Positions 1,455-55,127 are shown, numbered from the stretch's first letter. The stretch: 64,000 nt of DNA from Podarcis muralis (GCF_964188315.1 NC_135660.1:66588001-66652000), one strand, 5' to 3'. Numbers and translations are program-made. The notes: a model not told the origin generated them from the letters alone.

Positions 1455-1564
1455 CGTCTTCATTTCCTGAAACAATGGAATAGATAATCGTCTGATTCAA
1501 AGCAGCAGCAGTTACAACAACAACGTGAGTTCCTTTGGGTGCACCTTCACTCACAGGAGGGGGC
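1455..1564 (-). CDS. PCDH15: PCDH15 exon (about 24), 110 bp: (R)[36 protein letters not shown](D)
   Basis: cag|GCCCCC acceptor, ACG|gtaagt donor; followed by a 112-bp intron. Confidence 0.95.
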
Positions 1565-11537: not shown

Positions 11538-11650
11538 CTGTATTCATCCTGGGTAAACCTTGGAATTACTGAGGGTTGCAATACTGAAATTTCTACAGTG
11601 GTGGTGTTGAACTTCACAGGATCCCCATCATCATAGGCAATGACCACGAG
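11538..11650 (-). CDS. PCDH15: PCDH15 exon (about 23), 113 bp: LVVIAYDDGDPVKFNTTTVEISVLQPSVIPRFTQDEY(R)
   Basis: tag|CTCGTG acceptor, CAG|gtatag donor; contains the EC9-EC10 linker. Confidence 0.95.
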
Positions 11651-14164: not shown

Positions 14165-14305
14165 CTTAAATAATGTACTGGGCTCTTCATTAAGGTTCAC
14201 ACGAGTAACCACACGTCCAGAATCTTCTTCAACATCAAAGATACTTGCACTGTAAGGGAACTGGACCACATCCACTTTATACCTCACCCAACTTGCTGGT
14301 GTCCC
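14165..14305 (-). CDS. PCDH15: PCDH15 exon (about 22), 141 bp: [47 protein letters not shown]
   Basis: tag|GGGACA acceptor, AAG|gtaata donor. Confidence 0.96.
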
Positions 14306-16005: not shown

Positions 16006-18559
16006 TTTTGATTTCAGGGTGCTTTATATCCCTCCCCCCAATACAACACAGGCATTAATTCACATCCTGGAGGTGAAACAGAGAAAGGGGATTGGGAGGG
16101 CCAAGTCCAAGCCATTTTGCAGCAAGCAATCAGAGGAATGTGCCCCCTTCGTGCCATAACAGAGAAAGTACACATTTGGAGAATACACAACCATTTAGCC
16201 AGATATGGGATCTATAGGGAATGGGTATCATAAAGCCGGCACACTGGAAGGGCCTGGAACAAGTTTTAAAAGTCATATGCAGATCCAATATTTGCAGAAC
16301 AATCACAGGTGAGTTGGGACACACAACTTTTTGATTTTTTAATGCTATGCCATGGCACAGTGTTGTTCCCACTGGGTTATCCTCAGTGTGGAAAGCCACC
16401 AGGCTGCTCCTGCTTATAGCAGTTCATTTGTGCATGAATGGCAGAAACCCTTTTTCAGAAGAATGAAAATTGCATTGTATCTCCACCAGGTGTTCCCAAA
16501 TTCCCCCACCAACCCACGTATCACTTGAAAAGTGCTTTAGGTTCTTGGTGGACCACTTAATGATTTTTTTGGCCTGTTGTAGCCATTGCAGATGCTAGAG
16601 ATACTGTATGATTCTTAATTGCATTTTTACAGAAACCTTGTAGACCACCTGTATGAAGCTCATGGAGGTGGTCTATGAGACTCACAGACCACAGTTTGGG
16701 AACCCCTGACCTACATGGTACTACCAAAGCCCCTACAAGTTCATGGGTGATGAATGGTTCCATGAAAGGTGACACTTTCTCCTCAGTCACATCTAGAACC
16801 AGATTTTTATACAAACACTTCAGTTTTAGAGTTGTTTATTTAGCAGCACTGGTGCGTATGGACCCTACACACACTTCTTACATTCCATATGGAAAATTAG
16901 TGTTGAGAGGTTTTTTTGTGTGTATTACTTTTCATCTTGTTATTTACAAAATCCTCACAGGAATAGCTATTATAACGTGTGCTACCTCATCACTGTCATA
17001 TCCTGTCCTCACTAAAACATAACACGCCATTCCTGACATCGCTTCTCTTGTCACCATGTGAGATGCCAGATGCTTCGAGGTCAGTCAGAAACTGCAGCAA
17101 CCAGGGAATTTTTTTGCTGTCATCAAGAAATCCCCAGAGAAGCAGATTGGAATTATTGTCCCATCAGAAGGGTAAAGCCCCGGGATTTGATTAATTCTGC
17201 ACACACCGTCAAAAACATGCTAAAATTATTAGTAGCAAGAGGAGCTAATAGAAAGACAAATGTTTAACAATTTTGCAGAGTCCTCCCGCATGCCATCTCC
17301 TGTAAATCAGAATACAAAACTGATTACAAGGATTTTTAGGCGTGTGTGTTAATTACTGTAAGTTCATAAACAATATGTCCTAGAGACAGGAGCTGCTGAA
17401 GCAACTGTATATGCAAGCTATGCAACACATATGTGCCGTCTTTGTGTGAGCTTGTTTTGCTTGTCAGTGGTTTCCATCCTGTATGTGTGGCTTTTCTATG
17501 TCATTCTATAGGACCTCATTTACCTTCTGGGCAACGTTCTGAGGACTTTATGCCGGTGGTGGACAGAGGCAATACTAGGCAGATCAATTGCTGTAAATTT
17601 TACCTGAGCAATTTCCTTCTGTTATGGAGACCTTGTTTATTGTTGTTGAGCTTTTCTTCTTCTTTTTTACAAAAACACCAAAAAAACACTGACCACAGAC
17701 AGTACAAATTTAGCTGTGTTGTTCTATTTCACGGAGAAGAGATTCCGCTTCATGAGATGGCTCCTGTATGCCATAATGAGGTATGATGACTACTCACAAA
17801 GTCTTCCCACTTGACTTGGCTTCTGCAAGTTGGCTTATTATATGGCTGATTCATATAAGCCTTCTGCAAATCAGCTGCCTGAATTCTGTATCACAGACAA
17901 GGTAAACTAAATCACTTCACTATGGTTTTCTTCTAGACTTACATGTTAAAGTTCACTATATCAAACCTTGTCGGTGATACTGCAGCCTCAGAAGAAAATA
18001 AATTACATCCTAAACATGCCATTTCCAGGAAGGGGAAAGAGAACTACCATCCAATGCTGCTTAACAGGAGGCTCTGAAATCAAACTATATATGACTTTCC
18101 ATTCCACATGGGTGTAAATTGAGAAATGCAACTCAAAGAATGGCAGTAATTCCATATATCGAAATTCGATCACATATATAGAAGAGAAAAGATACAGATC
18201 AGGAGACATGGAAAGCAACTTGTTCTCTTTTCTAACAATTCCAGAGTTAATGTGACGAGCCTTCAGAACTCTAATCAGTTCCTTGTGGTGAATTGCAACC
18301 CCCAAAAGTATTTGGAAGATGGGTCTGATTGACATTTTGCAGGCTCTAGCTCAGGTTGCAGAAATGATACAACATTTCAATAGAAGGCACATGACGGCTT
18401 ACTACAGGGCATTCCAAAGAGGCCATTTGTTCTCTCATTGGTTTATTACTGCTGGCACTTCTTCTCTTTGTGCACTGAATATGAAGGTCTGAGAGAAAAT
18501 GTAGGAAGCTGCCTTGTGAGTCAGACCACTGGCCCATCTAGTTCAGAATTGTCTACACT

Positions 18560-23555: not shown

Positions 23556-23672
23556 CGGAGGGTCCAGATCCTCAGCTTCAACTGTTGTTATAACCGTGCC
23601 CTTGATTGCATCAGGAGCAACCATGCCCCTGTACAGAGGTTTGTTAAATACTGGGGAGTAATCGTTCATATC
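23556..23672 (-). CDS. PCDH15: PCDH15 exon (about 21), 117 bp: [39 protein letters not shown]
   Basis: cag|GATATG acceptor, CCG|gtaagg donor. Confidence 0.96.
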
Positions 23673-33594: not shown

Positions 33595-33854
33595 CTTTCG
33601 GCTTTCGGCTTCTTGTTACTGGAACAGAGCAGGATCTCAGTGTTTGAGTTCCTATAAATACTGTTGAGGGGTGTGGTGTATAGCCTCCAATGTTCTGGGC
33701 AGAGAGGAAGTTCCCAGGCTAGTGTGCCTTTTCTTCTTTTGTTCCTTAATTGCTTGAGGGATATCTTGAGTGATTTCTTGAGTGATATCCTGAGTACCAC
33801 TTAGGTGGGTCATTAGGTGTGGATTAGTTGCCACTTAGGTGGGTCATTAGGTGT

Positions 33855-34970
33855 GGATTAGCCAAGACCCTCATCTCCAGAACCAAACGCCTGGCTGACA
33901 AAGACCACTTGACAACTGAGTTACAGAATCTCTCAAATGTGTTAATTGCCAATGGATACCAGCAAAACAGGGTTACGAAGCTAATCCAAAAAGAAACACC
34001 CCCCAAAAACCAAGACACAGAAGAAAACAATGGCATGGCCCTCCTTCCTTATATCAAGGGCACTACAGATAAAATTAGCAAAATCCTCCATAAACACAAT
34101 ATCAAAACAGCCTTTTGCGCCAATCAAAAAATAGCCAATATCCTCAGAAACCCCAAGGATAAAATCCAGTTGGAAAACCAAGGGGTCTATGAAATACCCT
34201 GCAAAGTCTGCCCAGCCACGTACATTGGACAAACAAACAGACGAATAAATGCACGTATCGCAGAACACAAGAATGCCGTCAAAAAAGAAGAAAAAACTTC
34301 CTCTCTTTTCCAACACATGAAAGAAACAGGACACGAAATTAATTTTGCAGATTCCAAATTGCTCTCTAACATGGAACATCACCACAAGAGAATAATCATG
34401 GAAGCCATCGAGATAGAGAAACACCCTCACAACATGAACAAGCGTGACGACACATCCCGCTTGCCAGACATCTGGAAATTAGCCCTCCCCACAAAAACTG
34501 ACACCAGATCCAGAGGCACACAGAACGCCATCACCAATCAACCACACCAGACCCAAACCCAGACCCTCTCCACAGATAAATTACAGACACCATCCAGTAG
34601 CCAAACCATGGTGGCACCTCCGGATGCTGCACCCCCCTGCAATCCCTACACAGATCTGGCTGGCACAGGCCACAAAACCACAGCTCGCCCCTATACACGA
34701 AGCCAAGCCAGAGCACAACTAAATGCAGTACAGCCATCTTCTCAGAAAAACTCTTCACAAAGTTCAAGAGGTCAAGACACAAAGGCTTTAGCAACTAATC
34801 CACACCTAATGACCCACCTAAGTGGTACTCAGGATATCACTCAAGAAATCACTCAAGATATCCCTCAAGCAATTAAGGAACAAAAGAAGAAAAGGCACAC
34901 TAGCCTGGGAACTTCCTCTCTGCCCAGAACATTGGAGGCTATACACCACACCCCTCAACAGTATTTATAG
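33855..34970 (+). CDS. Penelope ORF remnant: RT thumb/linker (KTLISR, LPYIKG) plus GIY-YIG endonuclease (GVYEIPCKVCPATYIGQT...EH...MEAIEI) and a low-complexity tail; no true start codon
   Basis: Uninterrupted frame within ORF 33828-34970; its first 9 codons derive from the inverted junction. Confidence 0.88.
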   Translation, partial: GLAKTLISRTKRLADKDHLTTELQNLSNVLIANGYQQNRVTKLIQKETPPKNQDTEENNGMALLPYIKGTTDKISKILHKHNIKTAFCANQKIANILRNPKDKIQLENQGVYEIPCKVCPATYIGQTNRRINARIAEHKNAVKKEEKTSSLFQHMKETGHEINFADSKLLSNMEHHHKRIIMEAIEIEKHPHNMNKRDDTSRLPDIWKLALPTKTDTRSRGTQNAITNQPHQTQTQTLSTDKLQTPSSSQTMVAPPDAAPPCNPYTDLAGTGHKTTARPYTRSQARAQLNAVQPSSQKNSSQSSRGQDTKALATNPHLMTHLSGTQDITQEITQDIPQAIKEQKKKRHTSLGTSSLPRTLEAIHHTPQQYL

Positions 34971-35020
34971 GAACTCAAACACTGAGATCCTGCTCTGTTC
35001 CAGTAACAAGAAGCCGAAAG

Positions 35021-35069
35021 CACCAGCCTGAAGATGACGAGTGAGACCTCGTCGAAACGTCGCCTAGAC
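35021..35069 (+). ncRNA. Minimal type I hammerhead ribozyme motif in the right pseudo-LTR
   Basis: CUGAAGA (35028-35034), U, stem II GACGAG/CUCGUC with loop UGAGAC, GAAA (35054-35057), palindromic ACGU stem III, GUC site ending at 35061. Stem I pairing is weak. Confidence 0.75.
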
Positions 35070-35724
35070 ACCCCAACTTTTACACGGGAAGACACCCGAG
35101 GACACCAAAACCTGCATATATATATATATATATATATATAATACATCCATTATAAGAATTCTCCCTTGTGGGAGCAGTCAAAAATGGATACCCCCACCTG
35201 TAGTCTGAAGTGCATCCTCCCCAAGAGGGTTGTACCATGTTTTATTTCTGCATCCACCATCCAGCTTTAAGAGAACGATCTGGAAGTTGCCTCATGCACC
35301 TTAGGAGCTGGCACAAAGTCAAAGTAGTAGAGGATCTGTGCTCATGGTGAAGCAATCAGATAATATTTTCCACATCCCTCACAAGTTTAGCAAGCCATGC
35401 CTTGACAAATATTGTTTAGGGCCCATGTCACAACTGACATACCACTACTTTAAGTCAATCTACATGGCTTTTGCCACCATGTGATGAGAAGTCCAGGTGT
35501 AGTGGATCATCATCCAGACTAGGTAGCTTTTTCTAATCCAGATCTGTAGTGACATGGGGGGACGGACCAATTCAATCGGTGCCTTGAGATAAACTTACGT
35601 GTGGTTCATCACATGACAACATCCCCACATGGCTTTCAGCTGTCCAGTCATGTTATATGCACTAGAGTCTAGTTCGAGTTGATATCAACACAATGACTAC
35701 TGCAAAGATGCCCCAAAATGACTT

Positions 35725-36189
35725 TTATAGAAACACAGATTTGCAGAGTTGGAAGGGATCCCAAGAGTCGTCTACTTCATCCTCCTGCAATGCAGGAATC
35801 TCAACTAAAGCATACATGACAGGTAGCCAGTCAACCTCTGCTTTAAAACCTCCAAGGAAGAAGACTCCCACCTTCTGAGGGAGTCCATTCCACTGTCAAA
35901 ACAGCTCTTACTGTCAAACAGTTCTTCCTGATATTTAGTCAGAAACTCCTTTCTTGTAACTTGATTCCATTGGTTTGGGTCAAACCTTCTGGGCCAGGAG
36001 AAAACAAGCTTGCTCATCTTCCATGTAATAGCCCTTGAGATATTTGAAGATGGTTATCATACCTCCTCTTAGTTTCCTCACATCTAGGCTAAACATACCC
36101 GGCTACTTCAACTGTTGCTCATAAGGCTTTGATTCCAGGCCCTTGATCATCCTGGTTGCCCTTCTCTCAACACCTTCCAGATTGTCAAT
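35725..36189 (-). mobile_element. CR1 LINE 3' fragment
   Basis: gagttggaagggatcccaagagtc tail and cccttgagatatttgaag (reverse FKYLKG motif). Confidence 0.85.
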
Positions 36190-40153: not shown

Positions 40154-40378
40154 CCTTATTCTCACAGTGACAGTAGCAAGGCCTGGAGGCATTGTTCCCC
40201 CAATATCGAAGGCTTCCACTAAAAAAGTGAATGCTGCATCTGGGTCAGGAAATGACTCAAAATCCAAGGACTTTATAAGTGACAGGTCCCCGTTAAATCT
40301 GTTCAGCGAAAAATACTGCAACGCTTCCCGGGTTCGTATTCCATAGGTAATATTGGCTCCAAGGTCAATATCCTTAGC
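40154..40378 (-). CDS. PCDH15: PCDH15 exon (about 20), 225 bp: [75 protein letters not shown]
   Basis: ctag|GCTAAG acceptor, AGG|gtaaga donor. Confidence 0.96.
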
Positions 40379-41830: not shown

Positions 41831-42136
41831 CTCTAAACGTAAGAAGACAGTGCCTGGGGGCAGGTTTTCAGGAATAGTCACTGTATAGGAGGCATTCGTG
41901 AACACAGGGCTGTTGTCATCAATATCCAGAACTTTGATTCCCAGAGTTAACGTTGTACGGCGGGCATCCACAGCTCCATCTGTTGCTTCAACAATGAGTT
42001 CATAATAGTCCCTGTTTTCTCTATTTAGCTTCACTGAAGTGTAAATACTGCCATTGGATGTTATGCGGAAAAGATTGTTGAAGTTTGCCAAACTGTAACG
42101 GACTTGACCATTTACTCCAGCATCTGGGTCAGTAGC
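41831..42136 (-). CDS. PCDH15: PCDH15 exon (about 19), 306 bp: [33 protein letters not shown]...[32 protein letters not shown]
   Basis: ttag|GCTACT acceptor, GAG|gtaaga donor; overlaps ORF 41816-42091. Confidence 0.97.
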
Positions 42137-43294
42137 CTAAAAGATAAGGGAGGGGAAGAAACATGAAATCAGGAGTTTGTAGCACAAATAGACCCTTTTC
42201 AGGTTAATGGAAGGAATTCAGATTCTTTGATATCAGATTCATAGCCCCACAACCCTAAGAAAGCATGGGCATCCAGGGCCACTAATCCAAACCTCCTTGA
42301 CAGAAATCCAGCTTCAAGAAAGCAAGGTCCCTGAAGGTTGTGGGAAGGTGCAAAAATAAGCCTACATAGCTGCCTGGGGTTGCTCTAAAACTGGATGCAG
42401 GAATGCTAAATTCAAGTAGGGACCAGGAATTAAGAAGGCGGCTAGGAAGTCCACACCTGCAACGAATAGTTAAGCAGTAAGGATAAATAAACAGTAGCCG
42501 GTACAATACTCCATACAGACCCATTTCCCAAAGTCTACACTTTTTCCCCGAATCTCTTGAATTATATCTATAACGAAAAGAAAGAAACTCTGCTTGCTTC
42601 CACTTTCTGTTGGGTGTTACTAGTTGCCAGGGTGAATGAAATCCTCGACTCTGTTCCTTTGGTCACTTGCTGCCAGTCCTACTTGGACCCACATCCAGCC
42701 CTGCTCCATTACTCCATTAGAACCATGGAAGAGGAACAGAACTCAGAATATCAGCAGATGTGACACCATACCTCCTCTTCTCTTTACCTTAAATAAATCA
42801 AGGCCTAAGTAACTTGGCTGCATAAGAGAAGGGAATGCCTGCTTGTGTAAGGCAATTTCATTTGTGCACATTTCTAAGAGCCTGCAGATAACACCCCATA
42901 AGTTGTTACATAACATAAAAGTCCCTGGTTATCAGCACTACTGTCAGGAAGTTTCCAAAGACATTTAATATCCTGCCATGGTGCTCAGTGGGAGGCATAA
43001 TAATGAAACCATTTATCTTCATGGAAATCAATTAAAAGTTAATTAAAATGGTTAATAAAAATCACACACTTGTTTCTCTTTTGTACTACATCAACACAAT
43101 AAACATTGGTGGTTTCAGCTTTATTTGTGTCTCAGGTTAACACATCCTTGCAAACAACACCTTATCAAAGGTGCCTATGTGGTGCCTACGGTGGCTTCTG
43201 CAATATAAGTGTTAATGTTTAGAGAGTTGAAAGAAGCTGCTTTCACTGGGATGGGGGGCTCAGGTACAATAGTAGCATATGCTGCACAGGTTAC

Positions 43295-43368
43295 ATTTTT
43301 GCCTGATAGGCTGCTGCTAGAGGAATAGGATATTTTTGCCTGATAGGCTGCTGCTAGAGGAATAGGAT
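43295..43368. repeat. Perfect 37-bp tandem duplication
   Basis: atttttgcctgataggctgctgctagaggaataggat x2. Confidence 0.95.
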
Positions 43369-43833
43369 CTGTGCCCCAAGATTACTATTTTAGACACACA
43401 TTCAGCAGGTGCAACATTTACTACTAGACTATCTGCTTCTCCATCCAACATCTACAGCAGTGTTTCCCAAACGTTTTTGGGCAACGGCACACCTGTTTAC
43501 CGGAAAAAAATCTCGCGGCACACCACCATTAAAGCCCCGCCCCGTGACGTCAGCGCGCAGCGTCACGCCGGGAGGGACGCACAAAAGTGAAAGTTTTTTC
43601 CCTTCCCCTTGCCGGGGTGGGAGGAGGCAGCAGAGCGAGGGACTGAGGGACGGCGGCAGCTGAGGCGGCGGCGATAGCGGGCGGAGGAGGAGCCGTTGCC
43701 GGGAGTTGCTGCTGCTGCTGTTGCTGCTGCTGCCCGGACATGCCGGCCTCCTCCTCCTCCGCTGTCTCGCAAGCAACCCACCCTCCCCCCGCTTCCCCAG
43801 ACCGTCTCCCCCCCCCACCGCCGTGTCCCCTAC

Positions 43834-43961
43834 CTGTGCTGCAGCCCCACTAGCCCCAGCGTGATCACATGGGGCACGTCCAGCTCCGTGGGCCACAGGC
43901 CGGAGGCGATGCACCCGAACACGCCGCACTCCTCCCGAATCCCCAGCTCCTCGAATTCCAT
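43834..43961 (-). pseudogene. PPAT: Captured PPAT (amidophosphoribosyltransferase) coding exon 1 inside the hAT element: [42 protein letters not shown](R)
   Basis: ggcaccATGG Kozak; 128 nt coding; CAG|gtaggg donor. Near-identical to the recalled vertebrate PPAT N-terminus ([43 protein letters not shown]), including the 11-aa propeptide and catalytic Cys12. Below the ORF-track length cutoff. No further PPAT exons are present. Confidence 0.95.
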
Positions 43962-44400
43962 GGTGCCCGAGCGAACACGTGTTGTTGTCAGCGCAGCTGC
44001 TTCTGTTATTGCCGCTGCTGCCTCCTGCCGCCGCCGCCGCCTGGGTTTGAGGGGGGGGGCGGAGGAGGAGGAGAAGGAGGCGGCGGCCTCAGAGGCGCGA
44101 GTTCCTCTCCGCGCCCACCCCTTGCGCCCGCCTCATTTACATGCATACATTACGAAGGGGCGAAATTCCCCGCCTCGGGGCTGCTCCGCGTGGTGGAGTT
44201 GGTTTCCCCACCCCAGAGGAGCAGAGCAAGAGAGGTCGCCTTCGGGGCGGGGGGGGGCTACTTTGTATCTGCCTTTGGACACAAGTTAGCTCCCGCTCGC
44301 TCTTTCTCTCTCCCCACAAGTTAACTTTGTTTCCCTCTCTCTTTCTCTCCGCGCGCGCGCTTCTGAGAGCGAGTTTTGCCCAGTGGCTCCGAGAGTGTAA
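43962..44400. promoter_or_regulatory. Captured CpG-island sequence upstream of PPAT: probable PPAT 5'UTR and PPAT/PAICS bidirectional promoter
   Basis: Directly 5' of the PPAT ATG; dense CpG, GC-box-like cccgcc/ccccgcc motifs and a (CG)n run at 44350-44360. PPAT and PAICS are known to be head-to-head in chicken and mammals. Confidence 0.7.
44383..44396 (+). pseudogene. Possible degenerate PAICS first coding exon (GTG GCT CCG A GAG T|gtaaac)
   Basis: Position and orientation fit PAICS. It resembles an MAP(A)E-type start plus GT donor, but has GTG rather than ATG and is 14 nt rather than the about 16 nt I recall. Speculative. Confidence 0.25.
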
Positions 44401-44996
44401 ACGGCTGGCTGAAGTGCTGAGGAGACCGCGAAGGGCGGAGGGAGCTGGGCTTTGCGCGCGACGGAAGGGGTTATTCCCCCCCCCTTATGGAAACGGGGTT
44501 TGAGGGAATAAGGGGTAGGGAGGAGACTTCGGTTTTTGCGCGACTGAGCAGGGGAAGGGGGCGTCGGCGGGCGCTCGCCTCAGATTGGAGAAACGCTACC
44601 AAAGGGTTGTGAGCGGGGGGGGGGTGTTAAAAACATCCCTCCCTCCGTGGGTGGAGGAAAGGGGGCTGGGAGGCAGGATGTGGCCCCGGCGGAGAGTTTT
44701 AGGTGGCCCAACCCCTTCCCTTTCCCAATGAGGTGGAAGCATTGGCGGGTTTCTGCAACCGCGCCCCGCCCCCTTCCGCCGTCCGTGCCCCCCCCCTCCC
44801 TTCGTACGCAGCCCCAAAAGTGCCTCCGGACTCCGAACGCGCTTCTTTTTCGGGTCGCTTCCCTCTCGCGCGCTGCTCACTTGGTTTTGTTCTCTCCTAG
44901 GCGCCCGACTCGCCCGCCTCCCTCCCACGGCACACCAGCCGGTGTCTCACGGCACACTAGTGTGCCGCGGAACACCGGTTGGGAAACACTGATCTA

Positions 44997-45352
44997 CAGT
45001 GGTACCTCGCAAGACGAATGCCTCGCAAGACAAAAAACTCGCTAGACGAAAGGTTTTTTTGTTTTTTGAGCTGCTTTGCAAGACGATTTTCCCTATGGGC
45101 TTGCTTCGCAAAACGGAAACGTCTTGCAAGTTTGTTTCCTTTTTCTTAACACCGTTAATACAGTTGCGACTTGACTTCGAGGAGCAACTCATAGCACGCG
45201 GTGTGGTAGCCTTTTTTTGAGGTTTTTAAAGACTTTGGTGATTTTTGAAGCTTTTCCAAAACTTTCCCGACACCGTGCTTCGCAAGACGAAAAAAATCGC
45301 AAGACGACAAAACTCGCGGAACGAATTAATTTCGTCTTGCGAGGCACCACTG
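44997..45352. mobile_element. Tigger/pogo-type (Tc1-mariner) MITE
   Basis: TIRs cagtggtacctcgcaagacgaa / ttcgtcttgcgaggcaccactg; TA on both flanks; internal gcaagacg repeats. Confidence 0.9.
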
Positions 45353-54998: not shown

Positions 54999-55127
54999 CC
55001 TCACTTGACCAACAAATGCATTGGCTTCCTCTTCTAGTACTGTAAGGTTCTTAGGCAGAAAAGGGTCAAAGACTGGCCCATTGTCATTTACATCTGTTAC
55101 AACCACATTCACTGTAGCAGTTGATGT
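54999..55127 (-). CDS. PCDH15: PCDH15 exon (about 18), 129 bp: [43 protein letters not shown]
   Basis: cag|ACATCA acceptor, AGG|gtaagt donor; DxNDN calcium-binding linker motif. Confidence 0.96.

What the first reader, a model, noticed from the sequence alone, without database searches (positions are those of the whole stretch)
41831..43961. Captured PPAT exon is sense to PCDH15 with a live donor 1.7 kb upstream of a PCDH15 acceptor: possible chimeric transcript or intragenic promoter
Seen: the PPAT donor CAG|gtaggg at 43834 and the next PCDH15 acceptor at 42136 are both on the minus strand, 1698 bp apart. The donor is phase 2 and the acceptor phase 0, so the splice would read ...[10 protein letters not shown] (50 aa) and stop early. 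The only downstream phase-2 acceptor in the window is the exon at 1564. Inference: a ubiquitous housekeeping promoter could drive ectopic PPAT-PCDH15 RNAs (NMD targets or uORF-led truncated PCDH15) or interfere with a tissue-restricted hair-cell/photoreceptor gene.
Basis: inference. Interest (0 to 1): 0.72.

Follow-up and report, generated by a model that had tools for sequence, protein, structure and literature searches.

The report
Transposon-carried PPAT gene start inside PCDH15
A young jumping gene (hAT type) in a wall-lizard genome carries a copy of the promoter and first exon of the purine gene PPAT and sits, in the same direction, inside an intron of the hearing gene PCDH15.

Summary
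Observation confirmed. On the minus strand an intact PPAT exon 1 (ATG 43961, 128 nt, donor CAG|GTAGGG after 43834) lies 1698 bp upstream of a true PCDH15 exon (42136-41831, phase 0). The join does read ...[10 protein letters not shown] (50 aa).

The exon is cargo of a 1534-bp non-autonomous hAT element (43458-44991) with 13-bp perfect terminal inverted repeats and a perfect 8-bp target-site duplication, ATCTACAG. It is the only CpG island in the window.

New here: four UniProt short proteins of Podarcis muralis start with these same 42 residues and break exactly at this donor.
- One (A0A670KLX4, 74 aa) is reproduced exactly by splicing 43834 to a cryptic acceptor at 43659, inside the element and not in PCDH15.
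- Two others have tails not encoded in this window.
- No 50-aa PPAT-PCDH15 product appeared in the protein collection.

Exon 1564 is indeed the only frame-compatible acceptor, and it lies five exons away.

Verdict: a real, young promoter-plus-donor cargo in sense orientation. Chimeric RNA is plausible but untested and would be a decay target. This is a known kind (Pack-TIR). The scan has already noted similar promoter-carrying hAT elements elsewhere in this genome.

The parts
43458..44991 (.). Non-autonomous hAT-type transposon carrying host cargo (Pack-hAT), 1534 bp
   Evidence: Terminal inverted repeats and an 8-bp target-site duplication. No Pfam domain in any of its six ORFs of 110 aa or more. 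GC 64.5%, CpG o/e 0.81, the only CpG island in the window.
43450..43457 (.). Left copy of the target-site duplication ATCTACAG
   Evidence: (family D11). It fits the hAT target consensus nTnnnnAn (PMC2803484).
44992..44999 (.). Right copy of the target-site duplication ATCTACAG. It overlaps the TA and the first 3 bases of an older MITE.
   Evidence: D11, I1. It is an 8/8 match with the left copy.
43458..43473 (+). Left terminal inverted repeat, CAGTGTTTCCCAAACG
   Evidence: 0 mismatches to the pattern. The first 13 bases are identical to the right repeat.
44976..44991 (-). Right terminal inverted repeat, CAGTGTTTCCCAACCG. A subterminal GGCACAC repeat and hairpin region lies just inside it.
   Evidence: I2, I3, D9. 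The hairpin has z -3.77.
43834..43961 (-). Captured PPAT exon 1 coding part (42 codons plus 2 nt)
   Evidence: 29/31 identical to solved PPAT, E 6e-14. (identical to the first 42 aa of four Podarcis muralis UniProt entries).
43832..43833 (-). GT of the splice donor CAG|GTAGGG
   Evidence: Heuristic score 9.0 against 10.2 for the genuine PCDH15 exon donor. All four UniProt models diverge exactly here.
43962..44919 (-). Captured upstream CpG-island region (5'UTR and presumed PPAT/PAICS shared promoter)
   Evidence: CpG o/e 0.81-0.84. GC boxes, CCAAT boxes and a GCGCGCGCGC stretch are present, with no TATA. Logan contigs L001-L003 are collinear over 43821-44773 at 99.2-99.4%.
43976..43981 (.). 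Canonical E-box CACGTG, 15 nt upstream of the ATG
   Evidence: PPAT is a direct MYC target that shares a bidirectional promoter with PAICS in mammals (PMC2444028). This is consistency only.
43563..43659 (-). Cryptic second exon inside the cargo. The acceptor AG is at 43661-43660, the tail of 32 aa follows, and the stop TGA is at 43565-43563.
   Evidence: The tail of UniProt A0A670KLX4 (P0002) maps exactly to 43658..43566. The sequence was read.
41831..42136 (-).
   Evidence: Acceptor score 10.2, the best in the interval.
54999..55127 (-). Preceding PCDH15 exon
   Evidence: 5w1d residues 306-348, directly before the 349 start of the next exon..
40154..40378 (-). Next PCDH15 exon, phase-0 acceptor
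   Evidence: 5tpk 135-208, 4xhz 29-102; Cadherin, 2.8e-5.
23556..23672 (-). PCDH15 exon candidate, phase-0 acceptor
   Evidence: It fills 4xhz residues about 104-142, between (inferred).
14165..14305 (-). PCDH15 exon, phase-0 acceptor
   Evidence: 4xhz 143-189, E 1.2e-19.
11538..11650 (-). PCDH15 exon candidate (37 codons plus 2 nt), phase-0 acceptor
   Evidence: It fills the 4xhz 190-227 gap between (inferred).
1455..1564 (-). PCDH15 exon whose acceptor takes a 2-nt carry-over, the only one in frame with the PPAT donor
   Evidence: 4xhz 228-263, E 1.5e-10.
43120..43125 (-). AATAAA poly(A) signal between the donor and the PCDH15 acceptor (a second signal, ATTAAA, starts at 42969)
44997..45352 (.). 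Older TA-flanked MITE with 22-nt inverted ends (CAGTGGTACCTCGCAAGACGAA). The hAT element landed on its edge.
   Evidence: (I1, D1-D5).

Best explanation
Structure (shown):
- A young, non-autonomous hAT transposon has replaced its interior with about 1.4 kb copied from the 5' end of the lizard PPAT gene. The cargo comprises the CpG-island promoter region, the 5'UTR, an intact exon 1 with its splice donor, and the first 300-370 nt of intron 1.
- It inserted by cut-and-paste, leaving an 8-bp duplication, into the 12.9-kb intron between two consecutive PCDH15 exons. By chance it faces the same way as PCDH15.

Likely behaviour (inferred):
- CpG-island promoters tend to stay unmethylated wherever they land. 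PCDH15 is silent in most cells. The cargo therefore probably fires at some level as an independent small transcription unit.
- Its exon-1 donor then pairs with the first usable acceptor. The only pairing with annotation support is a cryptic acceptor 174 nt downstream, inside the cargo, which gives a 74-aa ORF.
- Some RNAs may run on or splice into the strong PCDH15 acceptor 1.7 kb further on. That join stops after 50 codons, so such RNAs would be decay targets.
- An in-frame fusion would need five exons to be skipped.

Net effect (inferred): no productive PPAT-PCDH15 protein and little or no effect on PCDH15.
For: - Transposon anatomy: perfect 13-bp terminal repeats, a perfect 8-bp duplication that fits the hAT target consensus, and no transposase.
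- PPAT identity of the exon.
- PCDH15 exon continuity around the insertion.
- CpG o/e 0.81 against 0.28 for the window.
- Donor score 9.0, close to the real exon donor at 10.2.
- Four Podarcis muralis UniProt models share the 42 aa and the exon end. One of them is reproduced exactly by the 43834-to-43659 splice in this window.
- The tails of two models are absent from the window, so they come from other loci.
- The 50-aa product was not among the 19 relatives of 23-75 aa.
- Phase map of the downstream exons.
- In animals, 30% or more of Pack-TIRs are transcribed, mostly as chimeras (PMC8277862).
Against: - No RNA data could be consulted, so transcription of this particular copy is unshown.
- The 74-aa model could have been annotated at the parental PPAT locus or at another identical copy. 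Reads from the parent can also multi-map to young copies.
- The internal acceptor scores poorly on a consensus matrix (3.1), while the PCDH15 acceptor scores 10.2.
- Absence of the 50-aa ORF from a protein collection is weak negative evidence, because short ORFs on RNA assemblies are rarely called.
Confidence: 0.5

Rival explanations
1. The copy is silent. Like most transposon insertions, it is methylated or otherwise repressed. All annotated short PPAT-head models stem from the parental PPAT gene or from other copies, and the donor here is never used.
For: - The insertion is very young: the target duplication and terminal repeats are perfect, and it shows one substitution in about 950 bp against the Logan contigs. 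High CpG content may therefore simply not have had time to decay.
- The gene models could not be placed on the genome.
- A sibling model (P0024) carries a CpG-to-TpG type change, as expected of a methylated copy.
- In humans, Pack-TIR transcription is mostly driven by host promoters.
Against: - The 74-aa model matches this copy at every residue, including 32 residues of unconstrained intron-derived sequence.
- From general knowledge, CpG-island promoters usually re-establish an unmethylated state at ectopic sites.
- The host gene is inactive in most tissues, so transcription-coupled methylation should be weak.
Confidence: 0.3
2. The captured housekeeping promoter is an active intragenic promoter whose main product splices 43834 to 42136. 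This would give widely expressed PPAT-PCDH15 RNAs that are decayed or serve as uORF-led truncated PCDH15 messages, and may disturb PCDH15 expression.
For: - Sense orientation, an intact donor, and the PCDH15 acceptor being the strongest in the interval (score 10.2).
- Complete CpG-island cargo.
- Chimeras with host genes are the common fate of transcribed Pack-TIRs.
Against: - An annotated nearer acceptor at 43659.
- Further acceptor-like sites at 43353, 43316, 42817 and 42567, and poly(A) signals at 43125 and 42969.
- No ...LLTQMLE protein in the collection.
- The product stops after 50 codons, and any re-initiated PCDH15 would lack the signal peptide and the upstream cadherin repeats.
Confidence: 0.15
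3. Artefact or true gene. Either the PPAT promoter was mis-assembled into the PCDH15 intron, or this is the genuine PPAT gene nested in PCDH15.
For: None beyond the presence of an intact exon 1.
Against: - Precise terminal repeats flanked by a perfect 8-bp duplication, which restores a continuous older MITE edge when the element is removed.
- No PPAT exon 2 anywhere in the 64 kb.
Confidence: 0.02

Closest known systems
Pack-TIR / Pack-hAT transduplication in animals (Tan et al. 2021, PMC8277862)
   Same: It is a TIR transposon whose interior is host-derived sequence, with a target-site duplication. hAT is the commonest carrier (208 of 370). An appreciable share are transcribed as chimeras with host genes.
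   Different: The cargo here is about 1.4 kb against a median of 224 bp. It is a whole gene head (CpG-island promoter, first exon, donor). In the human cases examined, transcription was driven by host promoters, not by captured ones.
Pack-MULEs of plants (cited in PMC8277862; own knowledge)
   Same: Gene fragments are mobilised between terminal inverted repeats. They are often transcribed and are mostly non-coding in effect.
   Different: The superfamily differs (Mutator, 9-bp duplications) and so does the kingdom. Pack-MULEs commonly carry internal exon fragments.
Engineered promoter plus splice-donor transposons used for activation tagging, such as Sleeping Beauty T2/Onc (own knowledge)
   Same: The design logic is the same: a promoter followed by an exon with a splice donor, which can splice into downstream host exons when it lands in sense orientation in an intron.
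   Different: This element is natural, not engineered. Here the frame does not fit the next five host exons, and a cryptic acceptor inside the cargo competes.
The native PPAT/PAICS head-to-head gene pair with a shared promoter (PMC2444028)
   Same: Exon 1 sequence, a TATA-less CpG island and an E-box next to the start codon.
   Different: Only the head is present. There is no PPAT exon 2 and the rest of the gene is missing. The PAICS side was not identified here.

Membership tests
hAT superfamily, non-autonomous element | 8-bp target-site duplication | tested here: met
   ATCTACAG at 43450-43457 and 44992-44999, 8/8 identical.
hAT superfamily, non-autonomous element | Target consensus nTnnnnAn | tested here: met
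   T at position 2 and A at position 7 of ATCTACAG. The consensus is from PMC2803484.
hAT superfamily, non-autonomous element | Short terminal inverted repeats beginning YARNG | tested here: met
   CAGTG... at both ends, 13 bases perfect, 81% over 26. The YARNG rule is from own knowledge.
hAT superfamily, non-autonomous element | Transposase with BED and hAT dimerisation domains (autonomous members only) | tested here: not met
   No Pfam hit in the six largest ORFs. The element must therefore be mobilised in trans. The partner autonomous element was not looked for.
Pack-TIR (gene-fragment-carrying TIR transposon) | Interior is homologous to a host gene, not to transposon sequence | tested here: met
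   PPAT exon 1 at E 6e-14, and identical to Podarcis muralis PPAT-type proteins.
Pack-TIR (gene-fragment-carrying TIR transposon) | A separate parental locus exists elsewhere in the same genome | tested here: inconclusive
   No exon 2 in the window. Other loci with the same exon are implied by foreign tails and variant copies. The parental locus itself could not be fetched.
CpG-island promoter | Length over 200 bp, GC over 50%, CpG o/e over 0.6 | tested here: met
   1534 bp, GC 64.5%, o/e 0.81.
CpG-island promoter | Transcription start activity | not testable with these tools
   No RNA, CAGE or methylation data are available. Motifs only.
Transposon-host chimeric transcript | Reads or cDNA spanning the 43834|42136 junction | not testable with these tools
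The exon-wise search found no protein with the predicted tail.
PCDH15 gene | Consecutive exons collinear with solved PCDH15 ectodomain | tested here: met
Functional PPAT gene | Exons beyond exon 1 that encode the amidotransferase and phosphoribosyltransferase domains | tested here: not met
   No exon-2-like sequence in any frame of the window.

The most novel reading that the evidence does not exclude
This copy is a live, self-contained promoter that produces the annotated 74-aa model nested in PCDH15. By splicing on into exon 42136, it also makes widely expressed 5'-truncated PCDH15 RNAs. Together with the other promoter-carrying hAT elements noted in this genome, it would show a transposon family acting as a natural promoter and splice-donor trap that scatters housekeeping promoters into host genes.
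Probability: 0.15. Interest if true: 0.65.

Novelty: new member of a known kind. Interest (0 to 1): 0.38.

Why it matters
If captured promoters on mobile hAT elements really fire, wall lizards carry a natural equivalent of the activation-tagging transposons used in genetics. Such a system could create new first exons, nested genes and ectopic host-gene transcripts at each landing site. That would make the birth of chimeric genes and promoter dispersal directly testable in a vertebrate with recently active DNA transposons.

For PCDH15 itself the expected consequence is small. Every frame-compatible outcome is either a short ORF or needs five exons to be skipped.

Tried and rejected
- Pfam and NCBIfam on the 42-aa exon gave nothing useful. 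The solved-structure search settled its identity.
- A word search with the 166-aa read-through ORF across the left transposon end found nothing. The 72-aa intron ORF found only P0002. Copy number, other insertion sites and the parental intron therefore could not be obtained.
- Exact look-ups of P0001, P0002, the junction ORF 44950-45192 and the ORF 43553-43741 found no contigs.
- The three Logan contigs that carry the exon stop at homopolymer runs (43821 and 44773). They cannot show whether they come from this copy, a sibling or the parent.
Exons were searched apart by reference, and the 74-aa match rests on a database protein whose two parts were located separately.
- Several short hits (P0006-P0009, P0012-P0014, P0017-P0019) carry the mammalian, possibly human, form of the exon. 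Their contigs were not fetched, saved or compared.
- The mis-assembly and true nested PPAT gene readings were rejected.

Full report
**1. The observation**

Read on the minus strand, the window holds an ATG at 43961 in a good Kozak context. An open frame of 42 codons plus two bases follows, ending at 43834, and then comes GTAGGG.
- The 42 residues match the N-terminus of solved amidophosphoribosyltransferase (PPAT) at 29 of 31 positions, E 6e-14. The match includes the catalytic cysteine that follows an 11-residue propeptide.
- Pfam and NCBIfam do not see so short a piece.
- 1698 bp downstream, after a long pyrimidine tract and an AG at 42138-42137, lies a 306-nt exon (42136-41831) with phase 0 at both ends.
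- That exon hits the Cadherin family at 6.5e-17 and solved protocadherin-15 over its full length (5tpk residues 33-134, 1.4e-48).
- Joining the two gives AG|G = Arg, then LLTQMLE and a stop, 50 residues in all.

Every number in the finding is right.

**2. The host gene**

Exon candidates on the minus strand were found by splice-site and open-frame scanning and placed on solved PCDH15 chains.

| Exon (minus strand) | Placement on solved PCDH15 | Acceptor |
|---|---|---|
| 55127-54999 | 5w1d 306-348 | not needed |
| 42136-41831 | 5w1d from 349; 5tpk 33-134 | codon boundary |
| 40378-40154 | 5tpk 135-208; 4xhz 29-102 | codon boundary |
| 23672-23556 | fills 4xhz about 104-142 (inferred) | codon boundary |
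| 14305-14165 | 4xhz 143-189 | codon boundary |
| 11650-11538 | fills 4xhz 190-227 (inferred) | codon boundary |
| 1564-1455 | 4xhz 228-263 | takes a 2-nt carry-over |

- The PPAT piece lies in the 12.9-kb intron between two consecutive PCDH15 exons, in sense orientation.
An in-frame fusion would need five exons to be skipped.

**3. What carries the exon**

- The GC-rich block is bounded by CAGTGTTTCCCAA at 43458 (plus strand) and at 44991 (minus strand). Each end is flanked by ATCTACAG.
- An 8-bp duplication with T at position 2 and A at position 7 is the hAT signature (PMC2803484). The CAGTG start fits the hAT terminal rule (own knowledge).
- GGCACAC motifs repeat inside both ends, and the right end folds into a strong hairpin.
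- None of the six largest ORFs has any Pfam domain, so the element is non-autonomous.
- Removing the element and one copy of the duplication restores the TA-flanked edge of an older 356-bp MITE (44997-45352). This rules out mis-assembly.
- No PPAT exon 2 exists in the window.
- The cargo is about 1.4 kb: roughly 960 bp upstream of the ATG, exon 1, and the first 300-370 bp of intron 1.
- It is the only CpG island in 64 kb (GC 64.5%, CpG o/e 0.81 against 0.28 for the window).
- It has GC boxes, CCAAT boxes, a GCGCGCGCGC stretch, no TATA, and a CACGTG E-box 15 nt before the ATG.
- In mammals PPAT shares a bidirectional promoter with PAICS and is a direct MYC target (PMC2444028). The motifs are consistent with that but prove nothing.

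**4. Species and age**

- The exon peptide is identical to proteins that UniRef assigns to Podarcis muralis. This agrees with earlier notes of this scan.
- Three Logan contigs from different runs are collinear with 43821-44773 at 99.2-99.4%.
- All three differ from the window by the same synonymous base (T rather than C at 43911, minus strand), by one homopolymer length, and in the length of a GC repeat.
- They may represent the parental locus, a sibling copy or another population.
- Either way the copy is very young, as the perfect duplication and terminal repeats also indicate.

**5. Is the donor live, and what does it join?**

A word search with the 43-aa genomic ORF and a cluster look-up returned four short UniProt entries of P. 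muralis. All begin with the identical 42 residues and all diverge exactly at the donor.

| UniProt entry | Session id | Length | Tail after the donor |
|---|---|---|---|
| A0A670KLX4 | P0002 | 74 aa | encoded exactly at 43658-43566, minus strand |
| A0A670HW21 | P0024 | 79 aa | same stretch with two substitutions and an acceptor 15 nt further upstream |
| A0A670I8T7 | P0001 | 60 aa | not encoded in this window |
| A0A670HP41 | P0022 | 51 aa | not encoded in this window |

- The A0A670KLX4 model corresponds to a splice from 43834 to an AG at 43661-43660. This gives a 174-nt intron, a first exon base at 43659 and a stop at 43565-43563, all inside the cargo.
- A0A670HW21 must come from another copy.
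- The tails of the other two entries are absent from all six frames of the window, so they belong to other loci.
- The tail of A0A670HP41 faintly resembles the start of PPAT exon 2 and may come from a decayed PPAT copy.
- The list of 23-75-aa relatives contained no protein ending ...LLTQMLE.

Caveats:
- The genomic positions of these models could not be retrieved.
- Models confined to the cargo could have been built from parental reads that multi-map to copies.
- Absence of a 50-aa ORF from a protein collection is weak evidence.

**6. Competing signals**

| Site (minus strand) | Type | Score |
|---|---|---|
| 43834 | PPAT exon 1 donor | 9.0 |
| 41831 | genuine PCDH15 exon donor | 10.2 |
| 42136 | PCDH15 acceptor | 10.2 |
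| 42567 | other acceptor-like site | 10.0 |
| 42817 | other acceptor-like site | 9.8 |
| 43353 and 43316 | other acceptor-like sites | 8.4 each |
| 43659 | annotated internal acceptor | 3.1 |

- Poly(A) signals lie at 43125 and 42969.
- Donor-like sites in the transposon's left end (43501, 43493) could close a small second exon, which might then splice onward.
- The outcome of splicing cannot be predicted from sequence alone.

**7. Most likely mechanism**

- Shown: a Pack-hAT element with a complete gene head landed in sense orientation in a PCDH15 intron.
- Inferred: the island stays unmethylated and fires at some level. The donor mostly uses nearby cryptic acceptors, as annotated. A minority of RNAs may reach the PCDH15 acceptor and be degraded, because the frame closes after 50 codons.
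- A re-initiated PCDH15 product would lack the signal peptide and the cadherin repeats encoded upstream of this exon. It could not function as the normal tip-link protein.

**8. Comparison with what is known**

- Tan et al. 2021 (PMC8277862) catalogued 370 Pack-TIRs in 100 animal genomes, 208 of them hAT, with a median cargo of 224 bp.
- They found that 30% or more are transcribed, mostly as chimeras. In humans these were driven by host promoters.
- This element belongs to that kind but carries a large cargo that includes a promoter.
- The scan has already noted sister cases in this same genome with the heads of RANBP9, PRKAR2A, PKD2 and FH, and similar untested chimeric-transcript ideas. I did not check those notes.
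- Functionally, the layout resembles engineered promoter plus splice-donor transposons (own knowledge).

**9. Verdict**

This is a new member of a known kind, of moderate interest. The decisive data lie outside these tools: model coordinates, copy-specific junction reads, start-site mapping and methylation.

Noticed in passing
window 44997-45352: A TA-flanked 356-bp MITE with 22-nt inverted ends (CAGTGGTACCTCGCAAGACGAA) and many internal 16-17-nt TCGCAAGACGAA-type repeats. It is probably Tc1/mariner-like. The hAT element inserted exactly on its edge.
   Followed up: partly
window 43295-43368: A perfect 37-bp tandem duplication (2 copies, 100% match) in the PCDH15 intron just outside the left transposon end. 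Each copy carries an acceptor-like CTCTAG|C site.
   Followed up: no
window 44935-44982: The right subterminal region of the hAT element forms a near-perfect 24-nt palindrome (folding z -3.77), while the left end does not. The asymmetry may reflect transposase-binding repeats.
   Followed up: partly
window 43962-44919, plus strand: The plus strand of the cargo should hold the PAICS side of the shared promoter and would point antisense to PCDH15. No PAICS exon was identified.
   Followed up: no
proteins P0022 and P0001 (UniProt A0A670HP41, A0A670I8T7), loci unknown: These are two further Podarcis muralis models with the same PPAT exon 1 but foreign tails. The tail of A0A670HP41 (ESVGIHSA) resembles a decayed start of PPAT exon 2, which hints at another PPAT-derived pseudogene or a larger duplicate elsewhere.
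   Followed up: partly
window 43911; loci L001-L003: Three Logan contigs from different sequencing runs all carry T where the window has C (minus strand, a synonymous Cys codon), plus a shorter C-run. This is a usable marker to tell this copy from another copy or allele.
   Followed up: partly
window 16693-16708: A single hAT-like end, CAGGGGTTCCCAAACT, with 3 mismatches to the terminal-repeat pattern. It may be a remnant of a related element, and no partner end was sought.
   Followed up: no
window 34001-36000: Strong strand asymmetry (GC skew -0.21, AT skew +0.22) with short tandem repeats nearby at 33749-33861 and 34827-34873. It is probably a repeat or retroelement fragment.
   Followed up: no
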